A stretch of DNA of 62,993 bases, counting the filler, from Olpidium bornovanus S191 (Eukaryota; Fungi; Olpidiomycota), in assembly GCA_017911155.1 (NCBI GenBank). It is 30 parts of 30 records of this genome, joined end to end, with 100 filler letters (N's around TTAATTAATTAA, not from the genome) between each part and the next. Parts side by side here need not be neighbours in the genome. Positions count along the whole stretch, not along the records: positions 28,184 to 30,860 come from JAEFCI010003460.1; 29 more parts are not named here. One strand, given 5' to 3'. Under the pieces are notes generated by a model that had not been told where the DNA came from, searched no databases, and saw nothing but the letters and a program-made list of their open reading frames with translations. This document shows, in pieces, positions 28,184 to 30,860 of this stretch (position 1 is the stretch's first letter; the number at the start of each line of letters is the position of its first letter). Position numbers and translations under genes: made by a program.

Positions 28184-30860
28184 CATGAACCTGGCTACCA
28201 CTCAGTTGGGGCTACCGCCATCTCTTGAGAACCCGAACGGCACAGTGCTGCTGTCACTAACGCAGCTTGCATCGAGTCTGCCTGCGGATGCGAGCCGCAC
28301 GATCGTCGCCGTCACGGCGTCCCTGGAGGGCGCATCGGTCCTGACGTCGGATGGGAAAGTTGTTCACCTCCCGATAGGCGGGGGCCTTGTGGTGTCGACG
28401 TTCACGGTGGTGCCAACGGCGCCGTTAACGACCATCAAGGCCGGCCTTCCGTTCTGTGACTTGGCATCTGCTTTGCCGACAAAGCTGAACTCGTATGTGC
28501 TCGGATGGAGCTCCCTCCCCGGCACAAATACGCTTTACCTCTCAACGGACGGCGGCGTCCATTTCGCCCCGCTTGTCTACTATCGCGGTGCGAGTCCCGT
28601 CACGACTAACGGGCAGCTCGGTTCAGGAGGGTACATACGTGACGCCGTGGTGAACTCGATTTCCGACCGGATCACTCTCCTTGTCCGCGACGCATATGAG
28701 ACTACTGCCAGGGACAGTGTGCTCTCCTGGGACATCCAGTCGTCTGCGTGGGTCGCAGGGTATGTCTTCCCTACCAGTGCGACAGATCACATCACTGCCC
28801 CATTGGACGCAGGGACGAAGGTATAGTCCAACGGTTGCAGTTTATGCACTAGAGGAAAAAGTGGGTTGTTTCGGGCTTTTAACTCAAGATGTTGCGGCGG
28901 CTGCTCGGCCACGTCTCTTAGGGGGCCAAAGGAGGACTGGCCATTGTTGGTATGAGCGGCGCCGAGATGATCGCTTACGGCGACAGCCTGTTCTACAGGC
29001 AAGTTTACCTGTGCGAGGCGGCGTTGGCGTGGACTTTTGACTGGTCTAATTTCACATTTTGCGTTAGCCCAAACGGCGGTTCGAATTTTTTCCTCATTTC
29101 TCTACAGTCGCGAGATCGTTCGCGACCCGCCCCAGGCCTGGCGAGCGACGAGTACATCGCACGGGTGGCGACCAGCCCGATGGGGAGGTTCGCTGCGTTG
29201 ACAAGCCAGAACCGGTGAGGAAATGCCGGCGGCGCAAGCCTTTATCCTCGTCCTCAGCTGCCGCAAGGTTTAATTTCTCGACTGGCACGGTGACGGTGGT
29301 CCCGCCCCGTAGGGTTTTCTACGGGAAAGCTGGCGTCGGCAGCGCCATTGAGATTTTGGCCGGATTACCACCCACGCAAGGAAAGAACGAACCCGTCGTC
29401 GGCGCGCCTGTAGCGCGAAATAATGCGGCCAGATTTCCTGACCTTCGGATATATCGATCCGCCCCCCAAAACAGATGCCACGCTGAGTTTTGATGTGTTG
29501 GAGAGACTCCGGGTACACACACCGGCGTCCGAGCAGGACGGATACGTGATAACCCGCGTCTTGCCGGTTGACAATCAGGTCATCAGCCCGAGGTAGGCCC
29601 CGGGAATGTTTTGTGCGCTTTTCCTCAAATGCTTGGCTTGTTTAAATCGCCGCCGTTTTTTTTGACACCGACAAGGCCGCCAATCAACTCCAATCCGATT
29701 TTGACGTGCCCGTACCTTGAGTGGTCGAGCAACCTGACCAGCGAATACGTGTTGGATGTTGAGGGAAGGCTTGCGTTCGAGGTATCCGTCGTGCCCAAAA
29801 GCGGCTTCAGTAACACTGTGTCGGTACGAACGTAAAAACCGGAAAGGTTCTCTGGAGATGATCTGAACGGACGTGTGGGTTTGCTTGCCTAATTTTTGTT
29901 CGTAATTTGCTGTCTCCAGATAGCGTTCTCGAACAGCAGCGTGATCTCCGTAAGCACCGATTCGACGGAAGAATACGCGTTCCCAAGCGCGGCCGCAACG
30001 AGCGACCCCATCATGCGCCGGAAATCCACGACGGTCATCACGCCGCGCTCTCCCGGGGTGTCCGGGAAAACGAACATGCGCGTCGCTCCGAGCGACGTGA
30101 GCCTGGGGTGTCAGCGAGTCGAAGATGTGAGCTGAGCGCTGGGCGCCACATTACGAGACGGCGTTCACTTCTGTTCATACGCTAAATCCTCGAAAATCCA
30201 TACTCGGACTTCCCCAGTATTCCACCGTCCGCATCGCATGCCCGCCCGCGAGACGGCTGGTGTACAGGTCGTCGCACTTTCTGCCTGCGTCGGAAAATTC
30301 CTGGAACTGTAGCGCGCTCTCCGCCGACGACGTCCCGGAGACAATCACCTTGAAACACAAGGAGTACATATCTGACTATTCCACCATGGCATTTGGACCG
30401 ACAAAGGTGTGCTCGGTTCGCCGGCTTATCACACGCGCTTTCTGCTCTCTTCGCGCCGAGTTACCAAAAACAAAAAAAAAACCCCCCAGTCCGATCTCAG
30501 GTCGGCAGCGGTGCTGCAGATGCGAACTCATTAACCCCAACCGCCCCGATTCAGGATATACCGTACGATTGCTCGCGCTTCGGACCGCCGAACAGAGTTT
30601 ACTACGGGGACCTCTGGAGACCTACCTTCGACATTTACGACGGAGACACGTTCGTCAAGCAAGTGACCGGGGACATCGTGCTTTTTGAACAAAACGGCAA
30701 GTTGACGTTCTCGTACAACGCCACCGTCGCCAACGTAAGCGAAACTATCAGGCCCAAACGGGGTTTTGTCGTACGAAACGGGACCTCAAAAAGACGTCTC
30801 TTTTTGGTCACGGAAACACAGGCCGGCTGCATCCGCCCTCCGCAGACGTGGAAATCCATG
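28184..30860 (+). CDS. CatSper auxiliary subunit delta/epsilon-like protein, internal part, 10 exons (28184-28820, 28922-28998, 29068-29214, 29313-?, 29475-29592, 29676-29823, 29920-30126, 30218-30406, 30555-30734, 30822-30860)
   Basis: Spliced motifs in CATSPERD/E order: LFYSPNGG, NRVFYGKAG, CPYLEWSSNLTSEYVLDV, GKTNMRVAPSDVSLGC, TVRIACPPARRL, YDCSRFGPPNRVYYGDLWRPTFDIYDGDTFVKQVTGDIVLFEQNG, FSYNATVANAGCIRPPQTWKSM. The exon 4 donor is unresolved. Similarity was judged from memory of the animal sequences. Confidence 0.8.

What the first reader, a model, noticed from the sequence alone, without database searches (positions are those of the whole stretch)
28184..30860. CatSper delta/epsilon-like auxiliary subunit in a fungus: a sperm-type flagellar Ca2+ channel complex
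Seen in sequence: the ORF track shows only fragments, but splicing at GT/GC-AG sites yields about 10 collinear exons. Their product carries the ordered motifs LFYSPNGG, VFYGKAG, CPY..YxLD, GxTxMRVxPSxxSLGC, TVRIACPPxRRL and the C-terminal block YD..FGPP.RVYYG.LWRP.F.IYDG..FVK.V.GD.VLFEQNG..FSYN.T...AGC..PQTWKSM. Established: CatSper is the animal sperm flagellar Ca2+ channel, with large single-pass delta, epsilon, beta and gamma subunits; core CatSper genes have been reported in a few flagellated non-animals, including the zoosporic fungus Allomyces. As I recall them, the animal delta and epsilon C-terminal ectodomains have this motif order, and epsilon ends it with QTWKSM. Inference: this fungus may run an animal-like multi-subunit CatSper complex in its zoospore flagellum, perhaps controlling motility, chemotaxis or host finding. 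I know of no functional study of such a system; whether this subunit is already annotated needs checking.
Basis: partly seen in the sequence, partly recalled or inferred. Interest (0 to 1): 0.88.

Follow-up and report, generated by a model that had tools for sequence, protein, structure and literature searches.

The report
Fungal CatSper epsilon-like channel subunit gene
This 2.7-kb piece is the middle of an expressed, intron-rich gene for a CatSper epsilon/delta-type subunit of the flagellar calcium channel, from a zoosporic, chytrid-like fungus; the call is correct, but this gene family is already catalogued and partly annotated in flagellated fungi.

Summary
RNA contigs from four studies lie on the piece without a mismatch.

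The identification also holds.
- The last exons pass Pfam's cut-off for the CATSPERD/E C-terminal domain and match mouse CatSper epsilon and delta in the solved CatSpermasome.
- The whole spliced product aligns collinearly (33-36% identity, E about 1e-87 to 1e-97) with chytrid proteins. These carry the epsilon N-terminal domain, the CatSper beta-propeller, the C-terminal domain and a transmembrane helix.
- A profile of those proteins plus the window's exons hits mouse epsilon at 1e-74 and delta at 4e-42.
- A related species and a soil-metagenome relative show purifying selection on the reading frame.

The gene is cut at both edges of the piece. Its N-terminal domains and transmembrane helix lie outside the piece.

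It is not new in kind. CatSper epsilon was reported as ancient in eukaryotes in 2017. CATSPERB/G/D transcripts were reported in Allomyces. A 2026 atlas lists CATSPER1-4, B, D/E, G, EFCAB9 and TMEM249 orthogroups in flagellated fungi, and NCBI already names chytrid orthologues.

I could not test whether this organism has the rest of the channel, or which species it is. One intron has non-canonical GA-AG ends.

The parts
28185..28820 (+). Exon 1 of the piece (212 codons; the frame is open at the 5' edge, so this is not the true first exon). It encodes beta-propeller blades with an Asp-box-like STDGGVHF at 28542-28565.
   Evidence: RNA contigs. Aligns to residues 267-435 of Chytriomyces P0005. 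AlphaFold model is all-beta, pTM 0.71, and its Foldseek hits are beta-propellers. No Pfam or PDB sequence hit on its own. Relatives read CTG, not ATG, at 28185, and their frame stays open upstream (loose ends).
28821..28921 (+). Intron 1, 101 nt, GT-AG, phase 0
   Evidence: Joint in X1, X2 and X17
28922..28998 (+). Exon 2 (propeller; first half of LFYSPNGG)
28999..29067 (+). Intron 2, 69 nt, GC-AG. It is in frame and has no stop, so it reads as open frame if left unspliced.
   Evidence: Joint 28996->29066 with 2 shiftable letters. The orthologue alignment has no gap at LFYSPNGG.
29068..29214 (+). Exon 3 (propeller; second Asp-box-like SPNGGSNF)
29215..29312 (+). Intron 3, 98 nt, GT-AG
29313..29380 (+). 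Exon 4 (RVFYGKAG, a block conserved as far as mouse epsilon)
   Evidence: Profile alignment to 9ubw_H from about residue 472.
29381..29474 (+). Intron 4, 94 nt, non-canonical. Its ends can only be read as GA..AG, GG..CA or AG..AC.
   Evidence: Joint 29378->29473 in X1, X2, X8 and X12. Splicing it out restores the frame and matches the orthologues.
29475..29592 (+). Exon 5 (end of the propeller region)
   Evidence: The PF15020 range in P0009 and P0011 maps to exons 1-5.
29593..29675 (+). Intron 5, 83 nt, GT-AG
29676..29823 (+). Exon 6 (middle, Ig-like region; conserved CPY cysteine)
   Evidence: Aligned to mouse epsilon 'CPYLAF' through the profile.
29824..29919 (+). Intron 6, 96 nt, GT-AG
29920..30126 (+). 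Exon 7 (middle region; GKTNMRVAPSDVSLGC)
30127..30217 (+). Intron 7, 91 nt, GT-AG
30218..30406 (+). Exon 8 (TVRIACPPARRL and a variable linker)
30407..30554 (+). Intron 8, 148 nt, GT-AG
30555..30734 (+). Exon 9: start of the CATSPERD/E C-terminal (stem) domain
   Evidence: Pfam PF22850, E 1.6e-12, 47.8 bits. Mouse epsilon 777-833 and delta 562-628 of 7EEB.
30735..30821 (+). Intron 9, 87 nt, GT-AG
   Evidence: Mouse epsilon runs on without a gap across the excised stretch (784->785).
30822..30860 (+). Exon 10, cut by the edge of the piece (AGCIRPPQTWKSM). The rest of the stem domain and the transmembrane helix lie beyond it.
   Evidence: The X2 contig continues about 430 nt past the piece.

Best explanation
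The piece is the central 603 codons of a roughly 1000-residue protein, encoded by a nuclear gene with many short introns. The protein is an orthologue of the CatSper epsilon/delta auxiliary subunit, with epsilon-type architecture, in a zoosporic chytrid-like fungus that lives in soil or on roots.

Shown here: the gene is transcribed and precisely spliced, the frame is under purifying selection, and the product is collinear with chytrid CatSper-epsilon-like proteins and with mouse CatSper epsilon and delta.

Inferred from the mammalian structure and from fungal gene surveys: the protein is a type I membrane glycoprotein. Its beta-propeller, Ig-like and stem domains stand outside the cell and, together with beta- and gamma-type subunits, form the canopy over a CatSper1-4 pore in the flagellar membrane. 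Its single C-terminal helix packs against a pore subunit. The complex admits Ca2+ into the zoospore or gamete flagellum and so changes the beat for turning or chemotaxis.
For: Expression and splicing:
- Spliced transcript contigs from several studies lie on the piece with 0 mismatches.
- The spliced frame is open for 603 codons.

Purifying selection:
- 20 of 28 listed exon-1 differences to organism B's orthologue fall on third codon positions (p about 4e-5).
- All 12 listed indels in a genomic relative from a soil metagenome fall in introns (p about 1e-6).

Family membership:
- Pfam CATSPERD-E_C scores 47.8 bits against a cut-off of 27.4.
- The window piece hits mouse epsilon and delta of 7EEB/9UBW directly at E about 1e-5.
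- The model aligns over residues 22-603 to Chytriomyces proteins at 284 bits, and to Zopfochytrium at 1e-97.
- These orthologues carry CATSPERE_NTD2, Beta-prop_CATSPERD and CATSPERD-E_C.
- They hit epsilon at 7e-41 through the transmembrane helix.
- A profile that includes the window's exons hits epsilon at 1e-74 and delta at 4e-42.
- The predicted fold of orthologue P0011 ranks 7eeb_H, G, F and E first, with E from 6e-41 to 1e-20.
- Window exon 1 folds as propeller blades.
- Six of the seven cysteines are conserved in 7-8 of the 8 fungal orthologues.

Literature:
- Epsilon is ancient and delta arose later (PMC5362262).
- The canopy roof is formed by the propellers of beta, gamma, delta and epsilon (PMC9205950).
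- Fungal orthogroups exist for CATSPER1-4, B, D/E, G, EFCB9 and TMEM249 (PMC13358043 supplement).
Against: The transmembrane helix, the signal peptide and the epsilon-specific N-terminal domains lie outside the piece and were not seen for this organism. No other CatSper gene of this genome could be examined, and the 2026 atlas says CatSper components are not universally retained in flagellated fungi. The window's own exons 1-8 give no Pfam hit on their own. The window's C-terminal piece does not separate epsilon from delta (29.6 against 27.4 bits). The organism is unidentified. Two large RNA runs with the same species label held no read of the gene. No functional data exist for any fungal CatSper.
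Confidence: 0.85

Rival explanations
1. The protein is a delta/epsilon-family ectodomain protein that has outlived the channel. The organism lacks a complete CatSper pore, and the protein does something else at the cell surface, such as adhesion or sensing.
For: CatSper components are patchy among flagellated fungi (PMC13358043). In the atlas table the D/E orthogroup holds 15 fungal proteins, against 9 for B and 11 for CATSPER4. No partner gene could be checked here.
Against: The family is known only as a CatSper subunit. The stem-domain residues and cysteines that contact the rest of the complex in animals are conserved. The gene is under purifying selection and is expressed.
Confidence: 0.08
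2. The contig is not fungal. It comes from another soil or root eukaryote, such as a flagellated protist, that was assembled or labelled with the sample.
For: Identity to the nearest chytrid proteins is only 33-36%. No protein above 50% identity exists among 1.84 billion cluster representatives. The sequence appears in soil and root metagenomes. No non-fungal protist homologues were available for a rooted tree.
Against: Every significant full-length hit is a chytrid protein. The best of them score about 250-310 bits, and the weakest, Phlyctochytrium P0012, 84 bits. The window's C-terminal piece alone scores about 30 bits to mouse epsilon. About four intron positions coincide with those of the gene for chytrid protein P0004. 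Flowering plants have no flagella and no CatSper (background knowledge).
Confidence: 0.06
3. The gene is a decaying pseudogene or a chance set of ORF fragments.
For: The unspliced sequence shows only fragments, and one intron has non-canonical ends.
Against: Exact splicing in the transcript contigs of X1, X2, X8 and X12 (four studies) restores a 603-codon frame. Third-position bias and intron-only indels point to selection.
Confidence: 0.01

Closest known systems
Mouse CATSPERE (CatSper epsilon; chain H of 7EEB and 9UBW)
   Same: The order of blocks is the same from the RVFYGK-like strand through CPY, the Ig-like region, the stem domain and QTW(K/D)SM. It is the best solved relative of the fungal orthologue group by sequence (7e-41; profile 1e-74) and by fold (6e-41). 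The orthologues also share the epsilon-type NTD2 and the C-terminal transmembrane helix.
   Different: Only the C-terminal piece of the window matches directly (E about 1e-5). The propeller region is too diverged for a direct hit. The organism is a fungus, not an animal, and the cell is a zoospore or gamete rather than a mammalian sperm. The N-terminus and transmembrane helix were not seen for this gene.
Mouse CATSPERD (CatSper delta; chain G of 7EEB)
   Same: It shares the PF22850 C-terminal domain, and the profile aligns over almost its whole length (229-898 against 50-721, E 4e-42). NCBI names the chytrid orthologues after delta.
   Different: It scores lower than epsilon for the orthologue group in every search, though the window's own C-terminal piece does not separate them (29.6 against 27.4 bits). 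Delta lacks the epsilon N-terminal domains and is reported to have arisen later in animal evolution (PMC5362262). The fungal gene is therefore better seen as a pre-duplication, epsilon-like form.
Chytrid CatSper epsilon-like proteins (Chytriomyces confervae TPX74159.1, P0005; Zopfochytrium P0011; Obelidium P0009; Podochytrium P0010)
   Same: They are collinear over the whole piece, with exon-by-exon correspondence, conserved cysteines and Asp-box-like motifs.
   Different: Identity is only 32-36%. In an unrooted tree the window's protein sits on a long branch outside the Chytridiales group, weakly joined to P0004 (support 81/91). It therefore represents a lineage that is not sampled in the protein databases.

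Membership tests
CatSper delta/epsilon auxiliary subunit family | CATSPERD/E C-terminal (stem) domain, Pfam PF22850, above the gathering score | tested here: met
   window:30549-30860 scores 47.8 bits against a cut-off of 27.4, E 1.6e-12. Only profile positions 26-91 of 215 are matched, because the piece ends there.
CatSper delta/epsilon auxiliary subunit family | Sequence homology to the solved subunits of the CatSpermasome | tested here: met
   The window piece hits 7eeb_H, 9ubw_H, 7eeb_G and 9ubw_G at E 7e-6 to 5e-5. A profile with the window's exons hits epsilon at 1e-74 and delta at 4e-42.
CatSper delta/epsilon auxiliary subunit family | Extracellular beta-propeller preceding the Ig-like and stem domains | tested here: inconclusive
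   The window's exons give no Pfam propeller hit. However, the exon 1 model is a set of 4-stranded blades that match generic propellers. The aligned orthologue regions match PF15020: P0009 above the cut-off (36.2 bits against 27), P0011, P0012 and P0010 just below it at 20-26 bits.
CatSper delta/epsilon auxiliary subunit family | Single C-terminal transmembrane helix with a short cytoplasmic tail | not testable with these tools
   This lies beyond 30860. The transcript runs on for about 430 nt. The orthologues have the helix, aligned to the mouse epsilon transmembrane helix (helix 929-973). No hydrophobic helix lies within the 603 residues.
CatSper epsilon specifically (as against delta) | Epsilon-type N-terminal domains (CATSPERE_NTD2) and a better match to epsilon than to delta | not testable with these tools
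   The N-terminus lies upstream of the piece, where the mRNA has about 1321 nt more. Orthologues P0001/P0005 and P0009 carry NTD2 and score higher against epsilon. The window's own C-terminal piece does not discriminate (29.6 against 27.4 bits).
CatSper channel complex (functional membership) | Co-occurrence and assembly with CatSper1-4 pore subunits and the beta and gamma subunits in the flagellar membrane | not testable with these tools
   Only this piece of the genome is available. Published surveys list these orthogroups in flagellated fungi, though not in all of them.
Functional protein-coding gene | Transcribed, correctly spliced, open frame under selection | tested here: met

The most novel reading that the evidence does not exclude
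The gene may belong to an unsampled, root- or soil-dwelling zoosporic fungal lineage. No protein above 50% identity exists among 1.84 billion cluster representatives, and the branch is long and falls outside Chytridiales. The assembly appears very fragmented, since the gene is cut at both ends of a 2.7-kb piece, and the sequence turns up in root-associated runs; both would fit an obligate root parasite such as Olpidium, but that is only a guess. If so, a complete sperm-type CatSper complex would have persisted up to the last flagellated relatives of the land fungi, and may steer host-finding zoospores. That would be a tractable non-animal system for CatSper, which still cannot be expressed heterologously.
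Probability: 0.2. Interest if true: 0.45.

Novelty: new member of a known kind. Interest (0 to 1): 0.22.

Why it matters
It adds one more diverged, expressed orthologue to an already documented picture: the CatSper channel, with its large extracellular auxiliary subunits, predates animals and survives in flagellated fungi. Its practical value is modest.
- It corrects the annotation of a fragmented contig, where an ORF view shows only fragments.
- It gives RNA-validated exon boundaries, including one GC-AG and one non-canonical intron.
- It flags a poorly sampled soil or root lineage.

The real open question is untouched by sequence analysis: what CatSper does in a fungal zoospore or gamete. 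My four full-text searches found no functional study of it.

Tried and rejected
- Pfam on the nine exon-sized pieces: only the last one hit. The weak Ig_GpJ_C match on exon 1 (E 0.079, below the cut-off) is treated as chance.
- PDB sequence search with exon 1 alone: nothing.
- The exhaustive representative search with exon 1 gave only 4 hits, the best at 35% identity. It found no close relative and no protein of the organism itself.
- The word-index homologue searches were capped at 8000 candidates. They returned only a few chytrid proteins and no animal or protist sequences, so no rooted tree was possible.
- Two metagenome scans, one with a protein and one with a degenerate DNA pattern, found nothing.
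- Cai et al. 2014 (PMC4169769) is not held in the library and is cited only through PMC5362262.
- Rfam and tandem-repeat scans of both strands found nothing. Minus-strand ORFs are short and unsupported.
- The pseudogene and chance-ORF readings were rejected on the RNA and selection evidence.
- The spliced 603-residue model could not be sent to the remote Pfam, PDB or structure tools, because it has no reference. It was analysed locally, and remotely through its exon pieces and orthologues.
- The Olpidium genome paper gave no data that could identify the organism.
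Full report
**What is in the sequence**

The piece 28184-30860 shows only broken ORFs when read as prokaryotic DNA. 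Public RNA data settle the gene structure.

Transcript contigs of 3457 nt (run X1) and 3561 nt (run X2) lie on the + strand of the piece with no mismatch and nine joints. Runs X8 and X12, from two further studies, carry the same joints.

The ten exons are 28185-28820, 28922-28998, 29068-29214, 29313-29380, 29475-29592, 29676-29823, 29920-30126, 30218-30406, 30555-30734 and 30822-30860. Joined, they give 1809 nt, or 603 codons without a stop.

Seven introns are GT-AG. Intron 2 is GC-AG. Intron 4 (29381-29474) has no canonical reading, and GA-AG is the best one. Introns are 69-148 nt long, and exon GC is 59%.

The piece is an internal part of the gene. The X2 contig has about 1321 nt before it and about 430 nt after it. 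Relatives read CTG instead of ATG at 28185 and keep an open frame upstream (loose ends), so the ATG at the edge is not the start codon.

**Is it a real, constrained gene?**

Yes, on three grounds.
- A transcript from a second species label (organism B, run X17) is about 92% identical and shares the intron positions. Of its 28 listed differences in exon 1, 20 fall on third codon positions (p about 4e-5).
- A soil metagenome (X9) holds the unspliced genomic form of a close relative. All 12 of its listed indels fall inside the nine introns, which make up 32% of the piece (p about 1e-6).
- Six of the seven cysteines of the product are conserved in seven or eight of the eight fungal orthologues, as expected for a disulfide-bonded ectodomain.

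No RNA family, tandem repeat or credible minus-strand ORF is present.

**What is it?**

The last exons match Pfam PF22850 (CATSPERD/E C-terminal domain) at 47.8 bits against a gathering score of 27.4. They also match mouse CatSper epsilon and delta from the solved CatSpermasome (7EEB, 9UBW) at E about 1e-5. Mouse epsilon runs on without a gap across the excised intron 9.

Exon 1 alone has no Pfam or PDB hit. An exhaustive search of 1.84 billion cluster representatives with exon 1 found four proteins.
- Two of them are full-length chytrid proteins.
- One, from Chytriomyces, is labelled hypothetical.
- The other is named by NCBI 'cation channel sperm-associated protein subunit delta-domain-containing protein'.

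The spliced 603-residue model aligns from residue 22 to residue 603 with residues 267-819 of the 970-residue Chytriomyces proteins (284 bits). It aligns with Zopfochytrium at 1e-97 and 36% identity. Exon boundaries fall at gap-free places.

Those orthologues carry CATSPERE_NTD2, Beta-prop_CATSPERD and CATSPERD-E_C. They hit mouse epsilon at 7e-41 through the transmembrane helix, and delta at 2e-20.

A profile of seven orthologues plus the window's own exon pieces hits epsilon at 1e-74 and delta at 4e-42. The epsilon alignment starts at the block that the window encodes in exons 3-4.

An AlphaFold model of the Zopfochytrium orthologue has moderate confidence (pLDDT 62). It ranks chains H (epsilon), G (delta), F (gamma) and E (beta) of 7EEB first, at E 6e-41 to 1e-20. 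Generic propellers follow only at 1e-10.

The window's exon 1, modelled with its orthologue segments, folds into four-stranded blades (pTM 0.71) that match beta-propellers. It also carries Asp-box-like S-x-D/N-x-G-x-x-F motifs.

The piece therefore encodes most of the propeller (exons 1-5), the middle Ig-like region (exons 6-8) and the first third of the stem domain (exons 9-10). The protein is an epsilon-type CatSper auxiliary subunit.

**Whose gene is it?**

All significant full-length relatives found are from Chytridiomycota: Chytriomyces, Obelidium, Podochytrium, Zopfochytrium, Phlyctochytrium and Dinochytrium.

Identity to them is only 26-36%. In an unrooted tree the window's protein sits on a long branch outside the Chytridiales group, weakly joined to P0004. 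About four of its intron positions coincide, within a couple of residues, with those of the P0004 gene. This is approximate, because it rests on tblastn segment ends.

No protein above 50% identity is in the representative library. The sequence occurs in soil and root metagenome and metatranscriptome runs.

I conclude that this is a zoosporic fungus of a poorly sampled lineage. The species was not identified, and a non-fungal protist origin is unlikely but not excluded.

**How it most likely works**

Established for mammals: the beta-propellers of the four auxiliary subunits beta, gamma, delta and epsilon form the roof of a canopy over the CatSper1-4 pore (PMC9205950). CatSper admits the Ca2+ that changes the flagellar beat.

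By homology, the fungal protein should be a type I membrane protein with the same ectodomain stack and a single C-terminal helix, seated on a fungal CatSper pore in the zoospore or gamete flagellum. Only the homology, the expression and the selection are shown here. The topology, the partners, the location and the physiology are inferred.

**Comparison with what is known, and novelty**

- PMC5362262 states that CatSper epsilon has the same ancient eukaryotic origin as CatSper1-4, beta and gamma, and that delta appeared later. Allomyces was among the genomes it screened.
- A preprint reports CATSPERB, CATSPERG and CATSPERD homologues expressed in sexual stages of Allomyces (10.1101/230292).
- The 2026 atlas of fungal flagellar proteins lists orthogroups specific to flagellated fungi for CATSPER1-4, CATSPERB, CATSPERD/E (15 fungal proteins), CATSPERG, CATSPERT, EFCB9 and TMEM249. 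It notes that they are not universally retained (PMC13358043).
- NCBI already names several chytrid orthologues.

The finding is therefore a correct identification of a new, diverged member of a known kind. It is not a new system.

**Limits**

- The spliced model could not be submitted to the remote tools as one sequence. It was analysed locally and through its exon pieces and orthologues.
- The N-terminal domains, the transmembrane helix and every partner gene lie outside the available sequence.
- The lists of differences are truncated, so the selection statistics rest on the listed subset.

Noticed in passing
window 29381-29474: Intron 4 has non-canonical ends. The RNA joint, seen in four runs from four studies, can only be placed as GA..AG, GG..CA or AG..AC. 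I could not check whether the genomic donor base is real or an assembly error.
   Followed up: partly
window 28999-29067: This GC-AG intron is 69 nt long, in frame and without a stop. An ORF view reads straight through it, and retaining it would insert 23 residues inside a propeller Asp-box motif.
   Followed up: partly
window 28184-28187: The ATG at the left edge is not the start codon. The relatives in X9 and X17 read CTG there, and their frame stays open for at least ten more codons upstream (..YIGSEAG L..).
   Followed up: yes
runs X21 and X24 laid on window 28184-30860: Two large 2026 RNA runs with the same species label as the positive runs gave no read at all, in samples of about 10 million reads each. 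Either expression is stage-specific, or the label is that of a host and the fungus is absent from these samples.
   Followed up: no
runs X9 (soil metagenome) and X17 (organism B) laid on window 28184-30860: A genomic relative of about 96% identity occurs in soil, and transcripts of about 92% identity occur under another species label. This suggests a group of closely related taxa in soil or root habitats.
   Followed up: partly
P0009 (Obelidium), residues 5-102: The annotated orthologue carries an N-terminal PIG-P domain in front of the CatSper epsilon-like body. This is probably a fusion of two neighbouring gene models.
   Followed up: no
L001 3001-7837 (gene of P0004): The annotated protein does not translate exactly from the locus, and several tblastn segments read through introns, so the gene model looks imperfect. 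About four intron positions coincide with those of the window's gene.
   Followed up: partly
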